Shown: piece by piece, positions 12,640-46,151 of the stretch
How positions within the stretch are numbered: the stretch's first letter is position 1
How the letters are laid out: every line of letters starts with the position of its first letter
Virus record (IMG/VR): IMGVR_UViG_3300046665_000548
Location: 124,001-188,000 of that record
Length of the DNA stretch: 64,000 nt
Direction: 5' to 3' (one strand)
Made by a program: the position numbers and the translations under genes
Notes under the pieces: generated by a model
What the model was told of the DNA's origin: nothing
The model's database searches: none
Seen by the model: the letters and a program-made list of their open reading frames with translations, nothing else

Positions 12640-12671
12640 TTGACTTTCGAAACATGGTCTGTGTATAAATA
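12640..12671 (+). promoter_or_regulatory. promoter of tRNA cluster 1 (TTGACT -35 overlapping T4-type late box TATAAATA)
   Basis: TTGACT 12640-12645, TATAAATA 12664-12671. Confidence 0.75.
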
Positions 12672-12674
12672 GAA

Positions 12675-12782
12675 ATGTTCGCGGATGGTCCGCGTCAAAA
12701 GGATTCGATACGTAAGATGTCCAGCTTGTTTAACAAACGCTTTTGGCGGCGCGTGCGCGCTGTCTCGGAGGTCGCAAGCTGA
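12675..12782 (+). CDS. attenuator leader peptide MFADGPRQKDSIRKMSSLFNKRFWRRVRAVSEVAS
   Basis: Codon run TTG TTT AAC AAA CGC TTT TGG CGG CGC GTG CGC matches the downstream tRNAs; 3' end overlaps the antiterminator arm (alternative start ATG at 12717). Confidence 0.75.
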   Translation: MFADGPRQKDSIRKMSSLFNKRFWRRVRAVSEVAS

Positions 12783-12813
12783 TCTGACGCTTTCACGTGT
12801 CATCAGGTTACCG

Positions 12814-12850
12814 AAGCCCTCCGAGGAAAATGATTTCCGGAGGGTTTTTT
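12814..12850 (+). terminator. attenuator terminator T1
   Basis: AAGCCCTCC/GGAGGGTTT stem plus T-tract. Confidence 0.8.
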
Positions 12851-12864
12851 CTTGTCTGCTTTGC

Positions 12865-12906
12865 AGAGCCCTCCCTGGAAAATCCTCGGAGGGCTTTTGT
12901 TGTTTT
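12865..12906 (+). terminator. attenuator terminator T2 (duplicate of T1)
   Basis: AGAGCCCTCC/GGAGGGCTTT stem plus TGTTGTTTT. Confidence 0.8.
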
Positions 12907-12939
12907 AGATAGGAGAAATACACGGGCGAATGCCCACAT

Positions 12940-13015
12940 GCTTCTGTAGCTCAGTTGGTAGAGCACTCGACTGAAAATCGGGGTGTCGGCGGTTCGAGCC
13001 CGCCTGGAAGCACCA
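12940..13015 (+). tRNA. tRNA-Phe(GAA)
   Basis: Cloverleaf, loop CT-GAA-AA, encoded CCA. Confidence 0.95.
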
Positions 13016-13535: not shown

Positions 13536-13622
13536 GAGCCGGTGTCCCGAGTGGCGAAGGGGGCGGACTTTTAATCCGTTGTTGAGAGACCATCGTGGGT
13601 TCGAGTCCCACCCGGCTCCCCA
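13536..13622 (+). tRNA. tRNA with TTT (Lys) anticodon in a class II, Tyr-like body
   Basis: GAGCCGG/CCGGCTC acceptor, loop CT-TTT-AA, 15-nt variable region, C73, CCA. Confidence 0.8.
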
Positions 13623-25066: not shown

Positions 25067-25098
25067 TTGACATCGAAATAACACCTGTGTGATAAATA
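25067..25098 (+). promoter_or_regulatory. promoter of tRNA cluster 2
   Basis: TTGACA 25067-25072 and TAAATA 25093-25098. Confidence 0.75.
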
Positions 25099-25103
25099 AA
25101 ACC

Positions 25104-25178
25104 ATGAACAAGAATGTCACAACAACCGTCGTTATTATTACGACCGTACGAAGCGGGAGCTTCGAACGAACGATGTGA
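25104..25178 (+). CDS. attenuator leader peptide MNKNVTTTVVIITTVRSGSFERTM
   Basis: 11 consecutive Thr/Val/Ile codons; the 3' half forms the antiterminator 5' arm. Confidence 0.9.
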   Translation: MNKNVTTTVVIITTVRSGSFERTM

Positions 25179-25202
25179 CGCGAGTTCATCAGTTCAGTTT
25201 CG

Positions 25203-25233
25203 AAACTCCCAGGGAAACCTCGGGAGTTTTTTT
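25203..25233 (+). terminator. attenuator terminator directly before tRNA-Ile
   Basis: AAACTCCC-AGG-GAAA-CCT-C-GGGAG-TTTTTTT. Confidence 0.85.
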
Positions 25234-25308
25234 GTGCTTGTAGCTCAGTGGTAGAGCGCTCGGCTGATAACCGAGAGGTCGGAGGTTCGAGCCCTCCCAG
25301 GCACACCA
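25234..25308 (+). tRNA. tRNA-Ile(GAT)
   Basis: Loop CT-GAT-AA, CCA. Confidence 0.95.
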
Positions 25309-32333: not shown

Positions 32334-33398
32334 GGATTGCTATGCGAACCACACGGCAAGGCGGGATGATGCACGGTGGCCCATTCGGGGGCAAGGCCAT
32401 GGCCTATAATTCCCATTTGATTCCCGTGATCATCAATGGTCTACGTGTTGGGGCATATGTGTGGGACGAGGACCATTGGGTGTGGGAACGTGAATAATCG
32501 TTTCCAACCATGGCAATGCCAAAAATGCGGAGCACAGATCGGTTATCTCGGTCTGTTCTTCCAGAAATTCTTGGGGTGCTTCCTTTTCGTTGATTGCGAG
32601 AGGAAGAAATAACAACGGGGGTGTCATGTGTCGCAGTTTCTTGACGCGCTTAAGGACTTCTTCTCGTTCGGGAAGAACCGTCCTATTGTAATTTGCGTGA
32701 GGGTCGCTAATACGCGCGTGTGGCCTCCCTACCTTGATGAACGTTGCGAGGCAGTATGCTTTTCTTGCGACACAATGGTATCGTATGAAAAGAAGAATAC
32801 CCGATATAGAAAGCTCTGCTACGAGTGCCACTTGCAGGGGAGAGCTTGAGATTTGATTGGACTATAATGGCTAAGAAGAAGCTCGCGCGGCCTCCCGTGC
32901 GTTCAATTCGCAAGGACCTTCGCGAGTGTTTGAAAGAATGTGCTCACCGAGATGAACTGTATTCGTCTTCGGTGCATTGGGTAAAGATACTCGAAATCGA
33001 ACGTCGCAAAAAGCTAGCCAAGCTTCTCAGGCTGCAAATCAAAACATTCGCGAGAAAATCGTAATCAGCCACGAACCTACTGGTTCTCCAAACATCAGCA
33101 ATACACAAAACACAATGAGAAATGGCACTGCCAGACAACGGGCTTGCACGCGTTTTAGAATGTCCATCATCGCTCCTGTCTAATCATTTTGTTCATAGAT
33201 CGCATAGTGTTTAACTTGCGATCTATCTCTTTCAATTTATTCTGCAATTCGTCATTTTTGGTCAGCGTTGAATTGAAGCTCGCCATGCCGACCAAACACG
33301 TCAAAACGTCCAGTTCCTCGTTTGTGAATTTCGACATCATGTCCTCCCGTTGAAAGAATTTACTCGACTATCTACCAGATTTCGTTCTAAATAGGGTC

Positions 33399-33476
33399 AT
33401 GAAGAAGTTAGCCGTTCAGTTTTTGCGACTTATGAACCCGTCCGCCTTGGCGGCCGGGAACGATTTAGCGCACTGA
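33399..33476 (+). CDS. putative leuS leader peptide MKKLAVQFLRLMNPSALAAGNDLAH
   Basis: TAAATA 5 nt upstream; 5 Leu codons (TTA, TTG, CTT, TTG, TTA); followed by an SD-sequestering hairpin. Confidence 0.7.
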   Translation: MKKLAVQFLRLMNPSALAAGNDLAH

Positions 33477-33485
33477 CGGCATGCT

Positions 33486-33516
33486 CTCAAGAGTGTGTCG
33501 CCCACACACTTTTGAG
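33486..33516 (+). promoter_or_regulatory. 13-bp hairpin sequestering the leuS Shine-Dalgarno
   Basis: CTCAAGAGTGTGT/ACACACTTTTGAG includes GAG of GAGGA. Confidence 0.7.
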
Positions 33517-33522
33517 GACGAA

Positions 33523-34785
33523 ATGGAAAACGATTTTTACTGCACCGTCATGTTTCCGTATCCATCTGGAGCGGGACTGCACCTGGGCCATTACTACAAT
33601 TACGCGATCACCGACTCGTACTGCCGATGGCTGCGCTATCGCGGGCAGTCTGTGTTTCAACCATTCGGCTATGATGCCTTTGGTCTGCCCGCTGAGAACT
33701 ATGCACGCGAGATTGGCGGCGATCCGGCCGATGTGACGCGAGCGAACATTGCGCGTTTTCGCGTGCAAATGGATCGCATGAACACGCAGTTCGATGAGCG
33801 GCTGGTAACATGCGAGCCGCCATATGTGAAATGGACGCAGTGGCTGTTTCTGCGAATGCAGGAGCGCGGACTGGCTTACAAGGCTTGGGGTCGAGTGAAC
33901 TGGTGCCCATCGTGCGAAACCGTACTGGCTAATGAGCAGGTCCAAGACGGCCACTGCGAGCGCTGTAGTTCGGCCGTAGACCCACGAGAGATGAACCAGT
34001 GGTATTTCCGGATCACCGACTACAAAGACCGCCTGATTGCCGGACTGGATCATATCGATTATCCGGAAGGCACAAAGAAAATGCAGCGCGTCTGGCTGGA
34101 GAACCTGCAAGATTGGTGCGTGTCTCGTCAACGTAAATGGGGCTGCCCGATCCCGGTAGAGGGAGAAACGGATACCCTGGATACGTTCGTGGACTCGTCA
34201 TTTTACTTTCTGCGGTATCTGACCGATTCGACGGAGGAGTTTTTGCCAGAGGGTGCGTTCAAACAGGTCGATCTGTACGTGGGCGGGGCCGAGCATGCCT
34301 GTATGCATCTGATCTACGCGCGCTTTGTGCATATGTTTCTGTATGATATCGGCGTCGTTCCAGTTGAGGAGCCATTCAAAAAGGTCATTCACCAGGGCAT
34401 GATCACCAAGGATGGGGCAAAGATGTCCAAGTCCAAGGGAAACGCGGTCAACGCGGATGATTATGATGCGGATGAACTGCGGTTCTACCTGATGTTCCTG
34501 GGACATTACTTCGACGGTGGTGATTGGTCCGATCAACACATCACTGGCGTTCGTCGCTTTTTCGGCAAGATGAAACGTTGGATGAGCGAACCCGGCTCGG
34601 ATCAAATCGACACGTCTAAGTTCGAGGAACTGATCGACCGCAACACGCGAGCGTTCAAGTTCAACAAGGTGGTAAGCGGCTTCATGGAGTTCTATAATCA
34701 GAACAAATCACGTAAGCCTGATGCGGAAAGCTGTCAGAAAATCGAGACACTACTGCGAATATTCGCACCTGGATTCGGTAACTAA
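33523..34785 (+). CDS. leuS: leucyl-tRNA synthetase, minimal (no CP1 editing domain)
   Basis: MFPYPSGAGLHLGH, GYDAFGLPAEN, WCPSCETVLANEQV, DWCVSRQRKWG, DTFVDSS, KMSKS; only 420 aa. Confidence 0.9.
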   Translation: MENDFYCTVMFPYPSGAGLHLGHYYNYAITDSYCRWLRYRGQSVFQPFGYDAFGLPAENYAREIGGDPADVTRANIARFRVQMDRMNTQFDERLVTCEPPYVKWTQWLFLRMQERGLAYKAWGRVNWCPSCETVLANEQVQDGHCERCSSAVDPREMNQWYFRITDYKDRLIAGLDHIDYPEGTKKMQRVWLENLQDWCVSRQRKWGCPIPVEGETDTLDTFVDSSFYFLRYLTDSTEEFLPEGAFKQVDLYVGGAEHACMHLIYARFVHMFLYDIGVVPVEEPFKKVIHQGMITKDGAKMSKSKGNAVNADDYDADELRFYLMFLGHYFDGGDWSDQHITGVRRFFGKMKRWMSEPGSDQIDTSKFEELIDRNTRAFKFNKVVSGFMEFYNQNKSRKPDAESCQKIETLLRIFAPGFGN

Positions 34786-35391: not shown

Positions 35392-36193
35392 TGCAGATCG
35401 AGAACCGCATTAGTATCATCAAGCGTCGCATCAGCGATCTTGAGCAACGATCAGAAGAAAATGGCGATCATGTTTACCAGTTAAGGGATGATATCTTGTC
35501 TGGAAAGATCAGCCAAAGTGAATTTACCGCTAGACTAGATCGGGTTCGCGAAGTACATTCCAGTCTTCGTGTCGAGCTTGATGCTTTGGCGCGCGAAGCT
35601 GGAGCGTTACGTGGAGCAATTACATCGTGATTATCTAGATATCTTGGCGAAGAAGTTTCGCGCCGAGGTAATGATCGTAACTGCCGATGCTTTTATTGAT
35701 AGGCATCTCGACACTGGTCTGACAATCGAAGACATGGCGACGCGGTTGAACACCAGCGCCGATGCGATTCGCCGTATGTTCGACATGAATGACCCCGCTA
35801 CCAAACGGGGTCTCGGTCTGTTGTCCGATATGTGCGCCGCTTTGGGATGCCGCCCGGTCGTTACCATTCGCGATATCGGCAGTCCTCCTGAAATCACTAC
35901 AGATCGCGAAACTCGTACCGGGGACCATCTGCTCCAAGTGGCGAAATCGCTCGGGTGGCCCGACGATGGCGAGGGCGCGCTTGAGTTCGTTATGCGGAGG
36001 ACACGTGAGGTTGCGCTCGAAGATGCAGCAGCCACGACCGCGCTCCGAGAGATCGCGTCTATCGGTGCCCAAATCACTGATCCGGACAACGTATACGGGG
36101 TTCAGATGACGAACCTTGCCATCGCCGCGTTGGCGCGTCCTCCTGGTTCACAAAACACTTGACGTTTTTCTAATTCCTGTCATTGGATACGGC

Positions 36194-38002
36194 ATGCACG
36201 AATATCGTTCCCATACTTGCGACTCGCTGTCGCCATCACAAATCGATCAGACAGTTCGCCTGTCCGGTTGGTGTCACCGTATCCGTAACCATGGTGGTAT
36301 CCTTTTCATCGATCTTCGCGATCACTACGGCATCACGCAGTGCGTGATCGATCCCGCAGTTCTCCCTCAGGCTGAAAGCCTTGGTGAAGAATGGGTGATT
36401 CGCGTCGATGGTACAGTGCGATTTCGACCCCCAGGTACCGAGAATTCAAAACTCTCGACAGGAGAGATCGAGGTAAAGGTAGCTTCGCTTGACGTGCTCG
36501 GACCGGTCGTCGGGGCGCTGCCGATGCCTGTCGCGCATCTCCATTCCACGAGCGACGGTACGTTGCAGGAAGTCGAATATCCAGAAGACCTTCGGTTGAA
36601 ATATCGATTCTTGGACCTTCGCCGCGAACGGCTGCACGAGAACATGATGAAGCGAATGAAAATCATTCGCTGGCTGCGTCATCGCATGGAGGACGAAGGC
36701 TTCTTCGAATTCCAGACGCCCATCCTTACCGCATCGTCCCCAGAAGGGGCGCGAGACTTTCTCGTGCCTGCTCGGTTGCATCCAGGCAAGTTCTACGCGT
36801 TGCCGCAGGCTCCGCAGCAGTTCAAGCAACTTACCATGGTTGCTGGCTTCGACCGATACTTTCAAATTGCGCCATGCTTCCGTGATGAAGCTGCACGTTC
36901 AGATCGGTCACCGGGCGAGTTCTATCAACTCGACATCGAAATGAGTTTCGTAACTCAGGAAGACGTGTTTCGGGTTGTCGAACCGACGATTCGAGATTTG
37001 TTCAAGGAGTTCGGCGGCGACAAAGCCATCACCGAGACCTTCCCGCGTATTCCGTACAAGGAAGCGTTGCTGCGTTTTGGTACCGATAAGCCAGACCTGC
37101 GTAACCCTCTGCGTATTGTGGACGTGTCCAAGGCTCTCCAAGCCGACGACATGACACTCGCCCCTTTCAAGAAAGGCGTCGGCAGAGCTATCGTTGTGCC
37201 AGCCGCGATGCTGGCCGGGAAGTCGCGCAAGTGGTTCAAGGATATGGAAGGCTGGGCACAATCCCAAGGCGCGGCCGGTTTAGGATATCTGAGCGTCATG
37301 CTGACCGATGGTCGCGTGAGCTTCGCTGGACCGCTTGCTAAGTTTTTCGGTGAGCAATCTAGCGAGTTGGTTCGCGTCGCCGCCGACACAATCTTTGACG
37401 AGGGAGATGTCATTTTCTTCGCCGTTGGCGAGGAAAGCTCCACCATCAAATTCAGTGGACTGCTTCGTACAAAGCTCGGAGAGGAGCTTGGTCTGATCGA
37501 GCAAGACCGGTTCGAGTTCTGCTGGATCGTGGATTATCCCATGTTCGAGTGGAATTCTGACGAGAAGAAGATCGACTTCTCCCACAACCCCTTCTCGATG
37601 CCTCAGGGCGGCCTGGAGGCGCTTGAGGGCGATCCATTAGGTGTTCTTGCCTATCAGTACGATATCGTCTGTAATGGCATCGAGCTTTCGTCTGGTGCCA
37701 TCCGGAACCATCGACCAGATATCATGGAGAAGGCGTTCTCCATCGCTGGCTACGACAAGGAGGTGTTGGAAGAAAAGTTCGGCGGCATGCTGAATGCATT
37801 CCGTTGCGGAGCACCACCGCATGGTGGAATTGCACCGGGTATCGACCGCATGGTTATGCTTCTGTGCGAAGCTGAGAACCTGCGCGATGTCGTGCTGTTC
37901 CCAATGAACCAGAAAGGACAAGACCTGATGATGGGCGCTCCGTCTTCAGTAACTGCAAAGCAACTTGACGAGTTGAATATCAGGATCATTCCGAGGAAAT
38001 AA
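36194..38002 (+). CDS. aspS: aspartyl-tRNA synthetase (non-discriminating type)
   Basis: [50 protein letters not shown]. Confidence 0.95.
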
Positions 38003-38182: not shown

Positions 38183-38371
38183 ATGGGTGATGGCTCTAAA
38201 AATGGCGTCGGAACGGGCATGCGCAAGCATGGCCGTTCCGGTCATAACGGAAAATCTCCGAAGATGCGTCACCACGAACGTCTCTTAGCTGAACGTAACG
38301 AGGTCAAGGATCGCACACGTCTGAAGGACCCCAAAGAATCGGTCTCTGACCTTTTCCATAAGAAACCCTGA
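38183..38371 (+). CDS. small basic protein
   Basis: K/R/H-rich 62 aa in an operon. Confidence 0.55.
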   Translation: MGDGSKNGVGTGMRKHGRSGHNGKSPKMRHHERLLAERNEVKDRTRLKDPKESVSDLFHKKP

Positions 38372-38652
38372 TGTTGGACAAGGACGAGGCGTCGCTTCTA
38401 AATTCAATCTACACGCGGTCTATGGAGCAGGGTCGTGAGTGGTTTCCTTGCATCTGCAAAAAACAAGCGAGAATGGATGCGAGCGTACGGCTTATCAAAG
38501 CCGGGTTAATTGCTGTCGGAGAACGCGAGCCGCACCATCAGAGACTTCCACATTATTGGAGGATTCTCGGCCTCACCGAACAGGGAAAATTTATCGCCAA
38601 ACTATCTGGTTTCGATCTAGACATTTCAGACGAAGATTGGTAAATAACAACG

Positions 38653-38697
38653 ATGAATTCCACTCTCACCTACTTTGAGGCGATACGCACGCTCTAA
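38653..38697 (+). CDS. putative leader peptide MNSTLTYFEAIRTL with an ATA codon
   Basis: TAAATA 6 nt upstream; ATA at 38683; hairpin and two AUA-type tRNAs directly downstream. Confidence 0.6.
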   Translation: MNSTLTYFEAIRTL

Positions 38698-38714
38698 CCC
38701 CGAAAGGGGCTTTT

Positions 38715-38806
38715 GGGCGTGACCTTAGGTAGGGCGAGGGATTTATATCCCCTTTCAGGCGGTAGATGACCGTTCGGCTGTTGAGGTTCGAATCCTCCCG
38801 CGCTCA
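38715..38806 (+). tRNA. atypical tRNA-Ile(TAT) with long variable arm
   Basis: GGGCGTG/CGCGCTC acceptor, loop TT-TAT-AT, GGTTCGAATCC T-loop; reduced D-arm, ends ACTA rather than ACCA. Confidence 0.65.
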
Positions 38807-38817
38807 CTACATTTTTC

Positions 38818-38892
38818 GGGGGTGTAGCTCAATGGTAGAGCCGTTCACTCATAATGGACCGGTCGCTGGTTCGATTCCAGCCGCCCCCACCA
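38818..38892 (+). tRNA. tRNA(CAT), most likely Ile2 (lysidine type)
   Basis: Loop CT-CAT-AA; CTCATAAT...GGTCGCTGGTTC resembles E. coli Ile2; paired 1-72, so not an initiator. Confidence 0.85.
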
Positions 38893-39365
38893 TAAATGTC
38901 TCAAACGCAGTCTTGGGCGTGTATTCGTTGTCGTGAAACTCAAAGAGAAGTCCCTATGAAGAAGTTTCTGAAGACGATCATCGATCCGAACTGGCGACCG
39001 CATGATGGACCTATTCCGTTCATGAGAAATTACGGCGCGGCAATTGTCGCGATTGATCTGGCAATCATCATCGCTATCTTATTGCGAAAGATAGTAGGGT
39101 TGTCGCTATAGTCGTTTCATGTCAGATCATCTCGCATATGCATTCGTAATGGAAACCTTCCTCAAGCGGGAGCGCATTGGTTACAGCCGCCGTAACGCGG
39201 CGACCTCCAACAGCATTTACTTTCGACTGCAAGGGAAACGCCATCCATACACACTGCGGATCAGCGATCACGCAGCGATAGAAGAGAAATCCGAAACAGG
39301 ATGGGCAAGGTCTCCGGATTTCAACATCCAATCCTTTGCCGATCTAAAACGGGTTCAAACTACTC

Positions 39366-40076: not shown

Positions 40077-40136
40077 CACCTATTTAGAACCTTCAACTTA
40101 TTGCGTTTACTCCTCATCTGGCGATATTCTGGTTCG

Positions 40137-41123
40137 ATGCACGAATATACGCACAACGGTCATTTCAAGTGGGGCTTCAACGGCGTGTGGGGGTCGCCGC
40201 CTTCTAAAGAAGCTGGTCCCCAAAGCTACGCTGTGAAGTTTGGCGTGTCGAGTGGGCGCAAGCCGAATTTCGGTAAGGCGTGTCTGTCGGCCGCTCAGTT
40301 GATACGCGACAAAACCGATCTTCCAATCAACGTCGCGTTGTCCGGAGGTTACGACAGCGAAGTCACACTGCGATCTTTCGTTGATAGCGGCATTCCTGTT
40401 ACGGCGTACGTTGCGCGCTTCAAAGATGATGTAAACGTTGAGGAGTTCGAAACAGCCTGTTCGGTAGCAGATCGTTACGGCGTTCCTCTAAAGATTCTTG
40501 ATCTCGATGTGATCAAGTTCTGGGAAGAGAACTGGCGAGACTACGCTGACAGATACCATGTCATCTCTGGTCAATTCATGGTTCACATCTGGATCATGTC
40601 TCAACTCGATGGCTTCCCCGTTATCGGCGGGGGCGATCCCTATTTGGTGCTGACTAATCCGGATGACTATCAGGCGGCGGACGAAGACAAACGCTGGTAT
40701 TGTCGCTTCCTATCGAGGCAGCTTTCGACTACGCATTACCTGACCAGTGTTGATCGTCCAGGCGTCCCATTGTTTTATTACTATACTCCGGAACTTATTC
40801 TGTCATCGTTCGCCAACAATCACGTGGAATCTTTCATCCGTTACTGGGGCGACATCTACGCGAAATACATTACGAACTCACGGATCAAAAAACTCGTCTA
40901 TGGAGATGACTTTCCAACTCACATAGACAGACCGAAGCGAACTGGTTTCGAAGACATCGAGATCGAAGATATGGCCATTCGAAAGAAGTTGCGCACGATC
41001 TCAGAAAACCGAAACCCGCAGGCCATCTATCCGCGTGAGGATTTTGTAGCTGCGCTTCGTGGTGAACGAGAGTATCCAATCGATTGGGCCGCCCACTCCT
41101 ATACAAAGAGACTGTTTCCGTGA
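40137..41123 (+). CDS. PP-loop (asparagine synthase-like) adenine nucleotide alpha-hydrolase
   Basis: VALSGGYDSE; paralog of the next gene. Confidence 0.7.
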   Translation: MHEYTHNGHFKWGFNGVWGSPPSKEAGPQSYAVKFGVSSGRKPNFGKACLSAAQLIRDKTDLPINVALSGGYDSEVTLRSFVDSGIPVTAYVARFKDDVNVEEFETACSVADRYGVPLKILDLDVIKFWEENWRDYADRYHVISGQFMVHIWIMSQLDGFPVIGGGDPYLVLTNPDDYQAADEDKRWYCRFLSRQLSTTHYLTSVDRPGVPLFYYYTPELILSSFANNHVESFIRYWGDIYAKYITNSRIKKLVYGDDFPTHIDRPKRTGFEDIEIEDMAIRKKLRTISENRNPQAIYPREDFVAALRGEREYPIDWAAHSYTKRLFP

Positions 41124-42550
41124 CACGCATTCCTACACTGACGAAAAACAACTATTTCAAATTCGGTTACAACAACGAGTGGTTTCGTCTGAGACAGTCT
41201 CCAGATGAGGTCTTTACGGTTGATTTCGACCGGTGCACGCGCATGCCAAAAGACTGGCGAACGGAGACTATTCAGGCAGCGCGCGACATCTATGATTCCA
41301 CAGACCTTCCGATCCAAGTCATGTTCAGTGGTGGGATCGACAGCGAGGTTGTAGTGCAGGCTTTCCAAGCGGCCGGTGTGCCTTTCTCATGCGCGATCAT
41401 GCGCTTCAACAAGGGATACAATCAGCACGATATCAAGTTCGCGATAGACTATTGCACCACGCACTCAATTCCAAAGCAGATGTACGAACTCGACCTTGAT
41501 GATTTCTACGAGGGCGGACGGCTGCTTGAATATGCGGACGCCGTGAAGGCTTGCTCGTCCCATCAATGTGTGACGATGTGGTTAGCAGATCAGCTTGATG
41601 GATACCCGGTGATCGGCCAGGGCGAAGGCTATCTCTCGCGCATCGATCACGAGGCCACCGCGAAGCTTAGGGAAGACCCTATGAGCGGCGACGACTATGT
41701 TCTGATGGATAGATGGCAATATCGAGAGAAAGAGCGCATGGCCGCTTGGTATCGCTTCTTTCTTCTCCGCGAGCGTGACGGAGCGCCGGGGTTTCATCAG
41801 TATACGCCTGAGCAGCTTCTCAGCTACATTTCTGATCCTGGCGTGATGTCAGTGGTGAGCCGCAATCTCAAATACTCTACTGCGACCTCTAAGCCGGTCA
41901 TTTACGGTCGGCATTTTGGTTTGAGGCCGCGCGACAAATTCACGGGCTTCGAACAGGCTCTTCACCTTACGGAGAAATGGCAACCGTTTCTTCATGAGAG
42001 GCACATATATGCGGATCAAACCGCTTATTTTGAATATCATGAAATTCTCGATAAGCTAGCGGTAGCTCCTCTCATTCCTGATGATCTTCCGTTCGTTCGC
42101 GACGATTATCCGGATGGCGTATCGGAGGTTGACTACGAGGATTGCGTACCACTGCTGCGCAAGCTCTGGCCCGACAAGGTACCGACGCCTCGCTTCGATG
42201 ATACGCTCAAGCGGATCAAGGTGCCAAAGAGCACTCTGAAGCCTACATTCCTGATTCACGCTATCAATGGCATTCCTGTCGGCACCACGCATGCGTATCG
42301 AACTGGCGACGGCGAGGTTCGTATTCGAGGCACCTATGTTGAGCCCGAGTATAGGCGAACCAGTATTGCTAGCGATCTCGTGCTGGAGGTTCTTAAACTA
42401 TTCCCGGATTGTCACACCGCCTATACGTATCCGCGTGTTGGTTCTGAACAGTTCTATCAGAGCCTGGGTTTCGAGATTACAGGCGGACCATTTCCGATCT
42501 ACAAAGGCATCTATGAGGCCGAAAAATCCTTGCGCGGCAAAGTAGAATAA
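41120..42550 (+). CDS. PP-loop protein fused to a C-terminal GNAT domain
   Basis: VMFSGGIDSE; IRGTYVEPEYRRTSIAS...FYQSLGF; GTGA overlap. Confidence 0.75.
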   Translation: MTRIPTLTKNNYFKFGYNNEWFRLRQSPDEVFTVDFDRCTRMPKDWRTETIQAARDIYDSTDLPIQVMFSGGIDSEVVVQAFQAAGVPFSCAIMRFNKGYNQHDIKFAIDYCTTHSIPKQMYELDLDDFYEGGRLLEYADAVKACSSHQCVTMWLADQLDGYPVIGQGEGYLSRIDHEATAKLREDPMSGDDYVLMDRWQYREKERMAAWYRFFLLRERDGAPGFHQYTPEQLLSYISDPGVMSVVSRNLKYSTATSKPVIYGRHFGLRPRDKFTGFEQALHLTEKWQPFLHERHIYADQTAYFEYHEILDKLAVAPLIPDDLPFVRDDYPDGVSEVDYEDCVPLLRKLWPDKVPTPRFDDTLKRIKVPKSTLKPTFLIHAINGIPVGTTHAYRTGDGEVRIRGTYVEPEYRRTSIASDLVLEVLKLFPDCHTAYTYPRVGSEQFYQSLGFEITGGPFPIYKGIYEAEKSLRGKVE

Positions 42551-44864: not shown

Positions 44865-46151
44865 ATGCATGACATTAACTACATTCGCGATAATCCAGAT
44901 GCTTTCGATGCTGGTCTGGCGGCGCGCGGCCTCAAATCTCAGTCCGAAATATTGATCAACATCGATCAGTCGCGTCGGCACGCCCTGACCGAGCTTCAGC
45001 AAAGACAATCCAAGCGCAACGAGTTGTCGGCGCAAATTGGCGCGGCGATGAAGGCTGGTCAACGCGATGAGGCCGAACGCCTTAAGACAGAGGTGGTAAC
45101 GCTTAAGCACGCAATCGAAGATTGGACCGGTCGCGCTGCAACGTCTCAGACCATACTAACGCATGAACTGGAGCGTATCCCGAATCTACCGGCCGCCGAT
45201 GTGCCCGTTGGCAAGGATGAAACTGCAAATCATTTGGAAACAGTTTGGGAGCCGGACGGTGGGAGGCGCGTGATCGCCAATCCGAAGCCTCACTGGGAGC
45301 TAGGCGAGGCCCTGGGGATGATGGACTTCCAAGCTGGCACGATGCTGGCTGGGCCGAGAAGCACTGTTCTCCGTGGTCCTCTGGCCAAGCTAGCGCGGGG
45401 TCTCGGCAACTGGATGATCGACACTATGACGTTGGAGGGATACAGCGAGGTCGATGTGCCTTGTATCGTCAACGGTGAGATCATGCACGGCACAGGCCAA
45501 CTCCCCAAGTTCGAGGCCGACGCTTATCGGCTGAACGATGCCGACCAATATCTGATCCCCACGGCCGAAGTACCTCTCACCAATCTTGTACGAGACCAGA
45601 TCGTAGATGAGGATGCGCTTCCTCTTCTGTATACGGCTCTGACCCCTTGCTTTCGAAAAGAAGCAGGATCGGCTGGCCGCGACGTGCGTGGCATGATGCG
45701 CCAGCACCAGTTCATGAAATGCGAAGTCGTGATGATCACTCAGCCAGAGTTTTCTGAGATCGACCACATGAAAATGCTCATGCATGTAGGCAACCTCCTC
45801 AAACGACTTTTCCTACCTCACCGGTACATGAAGTTGTGCAGCGGGGACATGGGCTTTTCGGCAAAGAAGACTTACGATTTCGAGGTTTGGCTTCCGAGCC
45901 AAGATGCGTATCGTGAGATTTCTTCCGTGTCGAATTGCGGAGATTTCCAGGCTAGGCGAATGAACGCTCGCTTCCGCAAAAAGGATGGCTCGATCCACTA
46001 TCTGCACACTCTCAATGGGTCTGCTATGGCTGTCGGCCGGACGTTGATTGCCGTCATGGAGAACTACCAGAACGACGACGGATCGATCACGATCCCAGAC
46101 GTTCTCATTCCCTATGTTGGTTTCGGTAAAATCGAAGCGGGCATGCGCTGA
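44865..46151 (+). CDS. serS: seryl-tRNA synthetase
   Basis: GTGQLPKF, YLIPTAEVPL, FRKEAGSAGRDVRGMMRQHQF, EISSVSNCGDFQARR, TLNGSAMAVGR. Confidence 0.96.
   Translation: MHDINYIRDNPDAFDAGLAARGLKSQSEILINIDQSRRHALTELQQRQSKRNELSAQIGAAMKAGQRDEAERLKTEVVTLKHAIEDWTGRAATSQTILTHELERIPNLPAADVPVGKDETANHLETVWEPDGGRRVIANPKPHWELGEALGMMDFQAGTMLAGPRSTVLRGPLAKLARGLGNWMIDTMTLEGYSEVDVPCIVNGEIMHGTGQLPKFEADAYRLNDADQYLIPTAEVPLTNLVRDQIVDEDALPLLYTALTPCFRKEAGSAGRDVRGMMRQHQFMKCEVVMITQPEFSEIDHMKMLMHVGNLLKRLFLPHRYMKLCSGDMGFSAKKTYDFEVWLPSQDAYREISSVSNCGDFQARRMNARFRKKDGSIHYLHTLNGSAMAVGRTLIAVMENYQNDDGSITIPDVLIPYVGFGKIEAGMR

What the first reader, a model, noticed from the sequence alone, without database searches (positions are those of the whole stretch)
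38641..38892. AUA-sensing mini-leader ahead of two AUA-decoding tRNAs
Seen: TAAATA, a 14-codon ORF (MNSTLTYFEAIRTL) with its only Ile encoded by ATA (38683), then CCCC-GAAA-GGGG-C-TTTT, then tRNA(TAT) and an Ile2-like tRNA(CAT). CACGCTC (38688-38694) can also pair with GGGCGTG, the 5' acceptor strand of the first tRNA, extending the hairpin and misfolding it. Inference: a ribosome paused at AUA covers 38688-38700 and blocks this hairpin, so the tRNAs are made only when AUA decoding fails. This is a third instance of the codon-matched leader design, but weaker because it rests on one codon and a short stem.
Basis: partly seen in the sequence, partly recalled or inferred. Interest (0 to 1): 0.75.

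Follow-up and report, generated by a model that had tools for sequence, protein, structure and literature searches.

The report
Single-ATA mini-leader before phage tRNAs
A 14-codon mini-gene with one rare ATA codon lies between a phage promoter and two tRNA-type genes that would read ATA; it is the weakest member of an apparently undescribed system in which this 608-kb phage spells out, in a short upstream reading frame, the codons read by each tRNA operon.

Summary
The sequence features are all at the stated coordinates: TAAATA, the 14-codon ORF with its single ATA, the 4-bp hairpin plus TTTT, the CACGCTC:GGGCGTG pairing and the tRNA(CAT).

The "tRNA(TAT)" is only a tRNA-derived, non-canonical element. 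ARAGORN and Rfam do not call it.

The window is part of a 607,744-bp phage with 57 tRNAs. In this phage and three relatives, 11 of 52 tRNA clusters carry upstream ORFs enriched in the cluster's own codons (P<1e-4). Cross-paired controls reach this in 0.3% of cases. These strong leaders have 9-13-bp terminators.

The present locus fits the design in four ways:
- Its promoter-like site ranks 15th genome-wide.
- The ATG lies 6 nt after it, in the leaderless position.
- ATA is rare (4.5 per 1000 codons).
- Three other terminator-less mini-leaders carry the matching rare codons: TTA before tRNA(UAA), AGA/AGG/ATA before tRNA-Arg(UCU)+tRNA(CAU), and AGA/AGG before tRNA-Arg(UCU).

The hairpin is too weak to be a terminator. 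The leader is unusually complementary to the 5' third of the tRNA-like element (p about 0.004).

The best reading is a ribosome-occupancy switch on precursor folding, not classical attenuation. No homologous locus or RNA data exist, so function is unproven.

The parts
38618..38623 (+). -35-like hexamer TAGACA
   Evidence: Matches TTGACA at 5 of 6 positions and lies 15 nt upstream of GGTAAATA. The combined promoter score ranks 15th genome-wide.
   Evidence: Same class as TGTAAATA before tRNA-Val(TAC) and AGTAAATA before tRNA-Ser(GCT).
38653..38697 (+). Leaderless 14-codon mini-ORF MNSTLTYFEAIRTL plus TAA. It has no Shine-Dalgarno sequence, and its ATG lies 6 nt after TAAATA.
   Evidence: The ATG lies 3-7 nt after TAAATA in 10 of 16 promoters of this class.
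38683..38685 (+). The single ATA (Ile) codon, the proposed sensing codon
   Evidence: ATA makes up 4.5 per 1000 codons in 424 long ORFs, giving P(>=1 in 13 codons)=0.057.
38669..38680 (+). Leader segment CCTACTT-T-GAGG, complementary to 38723-38733 of the tRNA-like element (helix A)
   Evidence: Seen in the minimum-free-energy fold and in pair probabilities (0.85).
38688..38694 (+). CACGCTC, complementary to the 5' acceptor strand GGGCGTG 38715-21 (helix B)
   Evidence: pair probability 0.94 in free RNA.
38698..38714 (+). 4-bp hairpin CCCC-GAAA-GGGG, then C and TTTT. It could be a pause site but is too weak for an intrinsic terminator.
   Evidence: Folds at -4.6 to -8.5 kcal/mol, against -16.6 to -22.5 for ten terminators of the strong leaders. 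The terminator scan does not call it.
38715..38807 (+). 93-nt tRNA-derived element. It has a 7-bp acceptor stem (2 G.U), a canonical T arm, a long extra arm and a possible UAU loop. The D arm is defective and there is no CCA.
38818..38892 (+). tRNA(CAT), Ile2-like (would read ATA after lysidine modification by a host TilS); encodes CCA
   Evidence: No TilS family gene was found in the phage.

Best explanation
The locus is a small transcription unit of a 608-kb phage. A phage-type promoter (TAGACA-N15-GGTAAATA) starts an RNA at or next to the ATG of a 14-codon, Shine-Dalgarno-less ORF. That ORF contains one rare ATA codon. A tRNA-derived element with a possible UAU loop follows, and then an Ile2-like tRNA(CAU).

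It is a reduced 'mini-leader' version of a clade-wide design in which a short ORF upstream of each tRNA operon is written in the codons that the operon's tRNAs read.

It has no real terminator. The likely control point is therefore RNA folding.
- In naked RNA, leader bases 38669-38694 pair with the first 19 bases of the tRNA-like element (38715-38733), so the acceptor stem cannot form.
- A ribosome dwelling on the second half of the ORF covers both leader strands. It dwells longest when ATA is decoded slowly, with ATA in the A site covering about 38668-38697.
- The element can then fold and be cut free by RNase P.

Shown: the anatomy, the promoter rank, the rarity of the codon, the parallels in other loci and the unusual complementarity.

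Inferred: the transcription start, translation of the ORF, stalling at ATA, the folding switch, and any decoding activity of the first element.

tRNA(CAU) is probably made whenever the promoter fires.
For: Genome-wide design:
- Eight strong leaders in this genome.
- 11 of 52 clusters across four phages reach P<1e-4, against 0.3% of 670 cross-paired controls.

Promoter and start:
- The promoter site ranks 15th of all positions under a matrix trained on 11 other promoters.
- There are 16 sites with at least 5 of 6 matches in the -35, against about 3 expected by my own estimate. Ten of them have an ATG 3-7 nt after TAAATA.

Codon match:
- ATA is rare, giving P=0.057 for this ORF.
- Three other terminator-less mini-leaders carry the cognate rare codons. 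They are TTA before tRNA(UAA) (P=0.029), AGG/AGA/ATA before Arg(UCU)+CAU in G005 (P=2e-4), and AGA/AGG before Arg(UCU) in G004 (P=1e-3).
- Fisher's combined P for the four is 7e-7.
- This locus and the 219-kb locus align from the -10 to the tRNA start with z 5.2.

Identity of the second tRNA:
- tRNA(CAT) is Ile2-like.

Pairing:
- The leader to 5' tRNA-like duplex is -30.5 kcal/mol, z -3.4 to -3.6, reached by 0.4% of genomic 45-mers. Four strong-leader controls give z -0.6 to +0.6.
- The acceptor-stem probability of the tRNA-like element is 0.00 in free RNA and 0.82 with 38668-97 masked.
Against: - There is only one cognate codon. Single-isoacceptor strong leaders have 4-5 (His, Asn).
- P=0.057 is weak on its own, and 0.24 if ATG is also counted as cognate for CAT.
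- There is no credible terminator.
- Standard tools do not recognise the tRNA-like element, and it may be a pseudogene.
- The same thermodynamic model gives the genuine tRNA(CAT) acceptor stem only 0.05-0.20 in the precursor. Its absolute predictions about tRNA folding are therefore unreliable.
- The complementarity test was post hoc. The other three mini-leaders show only a trend (p 0.08-0.11).
- Two other Ile2-like tRNAs in the clade lack an ATA leader (G003 114924, G004 509765).
- Rare-codon tRNAs Arg(TCT) and Arg(CCT) of this genome have promoters without leaders.
- One promoter with a leaderless short ORF (genome 128162) is not followed by a tRNA.
- No homologous locus and no RNA data could be found.
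Confidence: 0.45

Rival explanations
1. Constitutive promoter plus incidental ORF. The promoter simply drives tRNA(CAT). The 14-codon frame, its one ATA and the complementarity are chance or by-products. The first element is a decaying tRNA pseudogene with no role.
For: - One ATA gives only P=0.057, or 0.24 with ATG counted.
- An open frame of 14 codons after an ATG is about 50% likely by chance (own estimate).
- The tRNA-like element scores under 21.5 bits, while all 16 called tRNAs in the window score at least 49.8.
- Another leaderless short ORF after such a promoter has no tRNA behind it.
- Other Ile2-like and rare-codon tRNAs manage without leaders.
Against: - Direct tRNA promoters in this genome place the tRNA 7-25 nt after the -10 with no ATG.
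- Here and in three other loci, a 60-100-nt leader starts with an ATG at the leaderless position and carries the cognate rare codon in 4 of 4 cases.
- The complementarity has p about 0.004.
Confidence: 0.3
2. Classical terminator attenuation. CCCC-GAAA-GGGG-CTTTT stops transcription unless a ribosome stalled at ATA prevents the hairpin, so both tRNAs are made only when ATA decoding fails.
For: - The strong leaders in the same genome work with terminators placed just before the first tRNA, often with GAAA-type loops.
- In G005 a 4-bp hairpin also follows the stop directly.
Against: - The stem has 4 bp and folds at -4.6 to -8.5 kcal/mol, against 9-13 bp and -16.6 to -22.5.
- There are only four T, and they can pair with GAAA.
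- The terminator scan does not report it.
- A ribosome with ATA in the A site reaches only about 38697 and leaves the hairpin free. The hairpin probability is still 0.39 when that ribosome is masked.
- Two of the four mini-leaders have no hairpin at all.
Confidence: 0.1
3. Translation-independent RNA element. The 65-nt irregular hairpin 38669-38733 (leader plus the 5' part of the tRNA-like element) is a processing or stability signal for the tRNA(CAT) precursor. It could be a 5' stabiliser or an RNase III/E site. The tRNA-like remainder would serve only as an RNase P/Z handle.
For: - The hairpin is strongly predicted (pair probabilities 0.85-0.94; ensemble free energy -88 kcal/mol for the whole precursor).
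- The element keeps exactly the acceptor and T arms that processing enzymes need, while its D arm is lost.
- G005 also has a long hairpin enclosing its leader.
Against: - It does not explain the ATG at the leaderless position.
- It does not explain the cognate rare codons in 4 of 4 mini-leaders.
- No conservation data exist.
Confidence: 0.15

Closest known systems
Ribosome-mediated transcription attenuation by leader peptides (trp, his, thr, ilv, leu, pheA operons; pheST for an aminoacyl-tRNA synthetase)
   Same: A short promoter-proximal ORF reports how fast particular codons are decoded. Ribosome position decides which RNA pairing forms downstream.
   Different: - The controlled genes here are tRNAs, not enzymes.
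- This instance has one regulatory codon instead of a run.
- It has no credible terminator and no terminator/antiterminator pair.
- The competing pairing involves the tRNA-like element itself.
- The ORF appears leaderless.
- The classical examples are named from my own knowledge. Four literature searches found no paper describing such attenuation of tRNA operons.
The strong codon-matched tRNA-operon leaders of the same phage and its relatives (e.g. window 12640-12940 and 25069-25234; genome 231937-, 238128-, 253293-, 259652-, 343185+, 523712+)
   Same: Same promoter class, ATG a few bases after TAAATA, and ORF codons matching the anticodons downstream.
   Different: They have 4-10 cognate codons in a run and one or two 9-13-bp terminators with T5-8. 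This locus has one codon and a 4-bp hairpin.
Mini-leaders before rare-codon tRNAs: genome 219 kb (TTA, tRNA-UAA), G005 64.8 kb (AGG, AGA, ATA; tRNA-Arg UCU + tRNA CAU), G004 262 kb (AGA, AGG; tRNA-Arg UCU)
   Same: - ORFs of 11-14 codons at the leaderless position.
- Single cognate rare codons within five codons of the stop.
- No strong terminator.
- The tRNA begins 14-52 nt after the stop.
   Different: - Only this locus has strong leader-to-tRNA complementarity.
- Only this locus has a non-canonical first tRNA.
Rare-codon tRNA dependence such as Streptomyces bldA (UUA), and the phage-borne rare-codon tRNAs ileZ-argN-argO of Stx phages
   Same: - Phage or regulator supply of decoders for ATA, AGA/AGG and TTA.
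- The tRNA(CAT) matches Stx-phage ileZ at about 79%.
   Different: - Those systems use the tRNA to gate target genes or to match codon usage.
- No upstream sensor ORF for the tRNA gene itself is known there (own knowledge).
T-box riboswitches
   Same: A feedback loop that reads the state of a specific tRNA pool to set expression of translation genes.
   Different: T-boxes bind uncharged tRNA directly and need no ribosome. No T-box or other Rfam family matches here.

Membership tests
Leader-peptide transcription attenuator | Short ORF close to the promoter, upstream of the regulated genes | tested here: met
   The ORF 38653-38697 lies 6 nt after a promoter-like site ranking 15th genome-wide.
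Leader-peptide transcription attenuator | Several regulatory codons cognate to the regulated product | tested here: not met
   One ATA in 13 codons, P=0.057. The strong leaders have 4-10.
Leader-peptide transcription attenuator | Intrinsic terminator between the leader ORF and the regulated genes | tested here: not met
   A 4-bp stem at -4.6 to -8.5 kcal/mol with four T, not found by the terminator scan. The strong leaders have -16.6 to -22.5 kcal/mol.
Leader-peptide transcription attenuator | Mutually exclusive alternative pairing governed by ribosome position | tested here: inconclusive
   An alternative pairing exists (leader 38669-94 with 38715-33, against the acceptor stem of the tRNA-like element). 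It switches in silico when a ribosome footprint is masked. It competes with a tRNA fold, not with a terminator, and the model underrates genuine tRNA folds.
Leader-peptide transcription attenuator | Conservation of the ORF and its regulatory codon in homologous loci | not testable with these tools
   No homologous locus was found in viral, metagenome or protein collections. Only analogous loci were found.
Codon-matched tRNA-operon leaders of this phage clade | Promoter of the TTGAC-N-TAAATA class with an ATG 3-7 nt downstream, and ORF codons cognate to the downstream anticodons | tested here: met
   TAGACA-15-GGTAAATA-6-ATG. ATA matches tRNA(CAU, Ile2-like) and the UAU loop. The match rests on one codon.
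tRNA (first element, 38715-38807) | Cloverleaf recognised at curated thresholds: 7-bp acceptor, D arm with GG, 5-bp anticodon stem with a 7-nt loop, T arm | tested here: not met
   The acceptor and T arms are present. The D arm is defective and the anticodon stem has an A.C mismatch. ARAGORN at default settings and the Rfam tRNA model give no call; the tRNA-Sec model gives 21.5 bits against a gathering score of 47.
tRNA (first element, 38715-38807) | Processing, CCA end and aminoacylation | not testable with these tools
   It encodes CTA instead of CCA. 11 of 57 called tRNAs also lack CCA. No RNA runs were listed.
tRNA-Ile2 (CAU, lysidine-modified) for 38818-38892 | CAU anticodon, not an initiator, and closer to known tRNA-Ile(CAU) than to tRNA-Met | tested here: met
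   It has a G1-C72 pair. Its best E. coli match (E 9e-5) is annotated tRNA-Ile and carries CAT. The genome has two initiators and one elongator Met elsewhere.
tRNA-Ile2 (CAU, lysidine-modified) for 38818-38892 | Modification of C34 by TilS | not testable with these tools
   No PF01171 match in the phage, while all 14 control genomes matched. The host is unknown.

The most novel reading that the evidence does not exclude
Huge phages of this clade run a codon-by-codon feedback on their own tRNA supply. Every major tRNA operon is preceded by a leaderless sensor ORF that lists the codons its tRNAs read.

For the rarest codons (ATA, TTA, AGA/AGG) a terminator-less mini version is used. In it, a ribosome stalled at the single rare codon frees the 5' half of the first tRNA from an anti-acceptor pairing with the leader. 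That allows folding and RNase P release, giving a translation-gated tRNA maturation switch.
Probability: 0.3. Interest if true: 0.85.

Novelty: new variant of a known kind. Interest (0 to 1): 0.62.

Why it matters
Leader-peptide attenuation is textbook for amino-acid operons. As far as four full-text searches and my own knowledge go, it has not been described for tRNA genes.

If it is real, a virus would measure codon by codon how well the infected cell decodes. It would then top up exactly the tRNAs that are short.

The mini-leaders would add a second mechanism that acts on tRNA folding rather than on termination.

The codon in each leader also gives a sequence-only read-out of what the phage 'expects' each tRNA to decode. 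Here, ATA ahead of a CAU tRNA argues that it is Ile2 and not Met.

This locus is the weakest case, so its main value is as a test bed. One codon and two short helices can be mutated cleanly.

Tried and rejected
Homologous loci to test ATA conservation. All attempts failed.
- The 90-aa upstream ORF has no relative in viral contigs or among 5.8 billion proteins.
- Exact and gapped patterns from the tRNA-like element gave 0 hits in viral contigs.
- A tRNA(CAT) 24-mer gave 0 hits in metagenome contigs.
- The PP-loop+GNAT neighbour has no relative.
- AspRS gave five relatives at 51-57% identity, but without synteny at this locus.
- The G005 tRNA pattern found only an identical copy.

RNA evidence: no sequencing run was listed.

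Relaxed ARAGORN as support for the first tRNA: rejected, because -ps85 adds 131 calls per 608 kb.

Reading the element as tRNA-Sec-like or allo-tRNA-like with an 8/5 or 8/4 arrangement: the pairs do not fit and the score is sub-threshold.

An alternative GAU 'anticodon' in the long arm: rejected by inspection because there is no U33.

Descent from tRNA-Leu(UAA) 233883: the similarity is shifted by two bases relative to the acceptor stem (inspection of the alignment), so it was not relied on.

Phage TilS: absent. The two downstream PP-loop proteins have no informative PDB or family match.

The 8-nt complementarity of CCCCGAAA to TTTCGGGG at the start of tRNA(CAT): about 0.5 such matches are expected by chance (own estimate), so it was not used.

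Full report
**What the window is**

The window is bases 124001-188000 of a 607,744-bp virus record. ARAGORN finds 57 tRNAs and a permuted tmRNA in the record, and GC is 51.7%.

The finding lies in a translation module:
- a LeuRS-like gene at 33481-34785;
- AspRS at 36116-38002;
- two PP-loop proteins at 40101-42550;
- an RNA-ligase fragment;
- SerRS at 44865-46151.

**Observation**

- TAAATA lies at 38641-46, and its TAA is the stop of ORF 38371..38643.
- ATG 38653 opens MNSTLTYFEAIRTL, which ends at TAA 38695-97.
- The single Ile codon is ATA, at 38683-85.
- CCCC-GAAA-GGGG occupies 38698-38709, followed by C and TTTT to 38714.
- CACGCTC 38688-94 is complementary to GGGCGTG 38715-21.
- tRNA(CAT) at 38818-38892 is unambiguous.

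The "tRNA(TAT)" at 38715-38807 is not.
- ARAGORN at default settings and the Rfam tRNA model do not call it.
- Its best Rfam hit is tRNA-Sec at 21.5 bits, against a gathering score of 47.
- ARAGORN finds it only at relaxed thresholds, and then with another anticodon. Such thresholds give 131 extra calls in this genome.
- It is nevertheless tRNA-derived. It has a 7-bp acceptor stem and a perfect T arm.
- The T-loop motif GGTTCGANTCC occurs 35 times in the genome. 27 of these are in called tRNAs, and I expect about one by chance.
- A TTTATAT loop on AGGGA/CCCCT is possible, but with an A.C mismatch.
- The D arm cannot be drawn without stealing the anticodon stem.
- CTA stands where 46 of 57 tRNAs encode CCA.

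**Context: the design is real**

Eight tRNA clusters of this genome are preceded by three things: a TTGAC-N17-19-TATAAATA promoter, an ATG a few bases later, and an ORF whose central run spells the codons of the tRNAs that follow.

| Leader run | tRNAs that follow |
|---|---|
| L F N K R F W R R V R | Phe, Leu, Trp, Arg, Arg, Lys, Lys |
| V T T T V V I I T T V | Ile, Thr x3, Val |
| L Y P M P C Y P | Tyr, Pro, Leu, Pro, Met, Cys, Pro, Cys |
| H Q H S H H | His |
| codons CTA CTC CAG CAA CTG CAA CTT | Gln and Leu tRNAs with exactly those anticodons |
| run of Ser codons | four Ser tRNAs |
| N R N N S N N | two Asn tRNAs |
| D E R E E D | Asp and Glu tRNAs |

Each is followed by a terminator of 9-13 bp, -16.6 to -22.5 kcal/mol.

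Three relatives share AspRS at 51-57% identity and show the same design. Over 52 clusters, 11 reach a window-binomial P<1e-4. Only 0.3% of 670 cross-paired controls do so.

Four full-text searches found no description of leader-peptide control of tRNA operons.

**Does this locus belong to the design?**

Promoter:
- TAGACA (38618-23), 15 nt, GGTAAATA is of the same class as the promoters that directly drive tRNA-Val(TAC) and tRNA-Ser(GCT).
- Under a matrix trained on 11 other promoters it ranks 15th of all positions on both strands. Only three untrained sites rank above it, one of them a shifted copy of a training site.

Start codon:
- The ATG lies 6 nt after TAAATA with no Shine-Dalgarno sequence.
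- 10 of 16 promoters of this class have an ATG 3-7 nt downstream, including promoters of ordinary protein genes. Leaderless translation is therefore the local rule.

Codon:
- ATA is rare, at 4.5 per 1000 codons in 424 long ORFs.
- One ATA in 13 codons has P=0.057, which is weak alone.

Identity of the second tRNA:
- Its best E. coli match is a tRNA-Ile carrying CAT.
- The genome holds two initiators and one elongator tRNA-Met elsewhere. The leader of the elongator's cluster contains ATG.

**Independent parallels**

Three other loci have the same reduced anatomy: an ORF of 11-14 codons at the leaderless position, single rare cognate codons near the stop, and no strong terminator.

| Locus | ORF | Cognate rare codons | tRNA(s) that follow | P |
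|---|---|---|---|---|
| Genome 219 kb | MNSLGHLRLSR | TTA (2.9 per 1000) | tRNA(UAA) | 0.029 |
| G005 | MKTRSNRLRRI, ending AGA CGA ATA TAA | AGG, AGA, ATA | tRNA-Arg(UCU) + tRNA(CAU) | 2e-4 |
| G004 | MNIRANNVLRRRR | AGA, AGG | tRNA-Arg(UCU) | 1e-3 |

- With this locus included, Fisher's combined P is 7e-7.
- The G005 case is a second ATA ahead of a CAU tRNA, and there too a 4-bp hairpin follows the stop directly.
- This locus and the 219-kb locus align from the -10 to the tRNA start with z 5.2.

Against the reading:
- Two other Ile2-like tRNAs of the clade have no ATA leader.
- Arg(TCT) and Arg(CCT) of this genome have plain promoters.
- One leaderless short ORF, at genome 128162, has no tRNA behind it.

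**Mechanism**

The hairpin cannot be equated with the terminators of the strong leaders:
- It has 4 bp and folds at -4.6 to -8.5 kcal/mol.
- It has four T, and these can pair with GAAA.
- The terminator scan does not report it.

What stands out instead is complementarity between the leader and the first 19 bases of the tRNA-like element:
- 38669-80 pairs with 38723-33, and 38688-94 pairs with 38715-21.
- The ATA lies in the internal loop between these two helices.
- The duplex energy is -30.5 kcal/mol.
- Against dinucleotide shuffles that is z -3.4 to -3.6 (2-5 per 1000), and 0.4% of genomic 45-mers reach it.
- Strong-leader controls give z near 0. The other mini-leaders give z -1.3 to -1.6.

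Masking a ribosome footprint changes the predicted acceptor-stem probability of the tRNA-like element:

| State | Acceptor-stem probability |
|---|---|
| Free RNA | 0.00 |
| Ribosome early in the ORF (38653-80) | 0.00 |
| ATA in the A site (38668-97 masked) | 0.82 |
| Ribosome at the stop codon (38680-38709 masked) | 0.76 |

The same model gives the genuine tRNA(CAT) acceptor stem only 0.05-0.20 in the precursor. These figures are therefore relative at best.

I conclude that the most likely mechanism is a ribosome-dwell switch on folding and RNase P release of the first element. tRNA(CAT) would be made whenever the promoter fires. This part is inference.

**What could not be done**

No homologous locus exists in the collections searched. 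Relatives lack synteny at this locus. No sequencing run was listed.

**Verdict**

The codon-matched sensor is plausible at about 0.45, the terminator reading is unlikely, and the first "tRNA" is unproven.
- Novelty: a new variant of ribosome-mediated attenuation.
- The larger result, systematic codon-matched leaders on phage tRNA operons, is strongly supported. It deserves more interest than this single locus.

Noticed in passing
window 12640-12940 and 25069-25234; genome 231937(-), 238128(-), 253293(-), 259652(-), 343185(+), 523712(+): There are eight strong codon-matched leader ORFs with 9-13-bp terminators ahead of tRNA clusters. The design is also present in three related huge phages. 11 of 52 clusters reach P<1e-4, against 0.3% of cross-paired controls. 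Four literature searches found nothing on this.
   Followed up: yes
window 33388-33476 (genome 157388): A leaderless 25-codon ORF, MKKLAVQFLRLMNPSALAAGNDLAH, has 2 TTA and 2 TTG codons (P=5e-4). It sits directly upstream of a 434-aa LeuRS-like gene whose LeuRS match falls below the curated cut-off. A 12-bp hairpin without a T-run follows it. It may be a UUR-sensing leader for a synthetase, in the style of pheST.
   Followed up: partly
genome 219040-219190(-); G005 64682-64900(-) = L010; G004 262068-262200(-): Three further terminator-less mini-leaders carry single rare cognate codons (TTA; AGG/AGA/ATA; AGA/AGG) before rare-codon tRNAs.
   Followed up: yes
window 13536-13622; genome 4091-4178 and 343310-343395; L009, L012, L015, L017: Well-formed tRNAs with long variable arms (85-91 nt) carry Lys, Asn, Gln, Thr or CUA anticodons. 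They are often next to a normal-length tRNA with the same anticodon or for the same amino acid, and they recur across the clade. Their charging identity is unknown. The 93-nt element plus tRNA(CAT) here would fit this 'long then normal' pairing.
   Followed up: partly
genome 258438(-), 252303(-), 230391(-), 247737(-), 438230(-), 182499(+) = window 58499: Six further canonical T-loop motifs lie outside any ARAGORN call, some within or beside tRNA clusters. These are probably more non-canonical or interrupted tRNA-like genes.
   Followed up: no
genome 4091-4256, 1944-2020, 576377-576796: The genome carries two tRNA(CUA) amber-suppressor-type genes. TAG is the least used stop, at 47 of 424 long ORFs. 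It also carries a tRNA with a four-base anticodon call (ggaa) and a permuted tmRNA with tag ANDNVAVSEYALAA.
   Followed up: no
window 40101-41123 and 41084-42550: Two adjacent PP-loop ATPase-like proteins, the second fused to a GNAT acetyltransferase domain, lie 1.2 kb downstream of the tRNAs. They have no informative family or PDB match. They are not TilS, but could be tRNA-modifying enzymes.
   Followed up: partly
window 38713-38721 and 38913-38921: The 9-nt direct repeat TTGGGCGTG occurs exactly 200 nt apart and brackets the two tRNA-type genes. Separately, CCCCGAAA (38698-705) is complementary to TTTCGGGG (38814-21) at the start of tRNA(CAT). Both are within chance expectation.
   Followed up: no
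genome 219040-219116(-); G004 509849-509926(-): tRNAs with the Leu anticodon UAA are only 77-78 nt long, so they lack the long variable arm that bacterial tRNA-Leu normally has.
   Followed up: no
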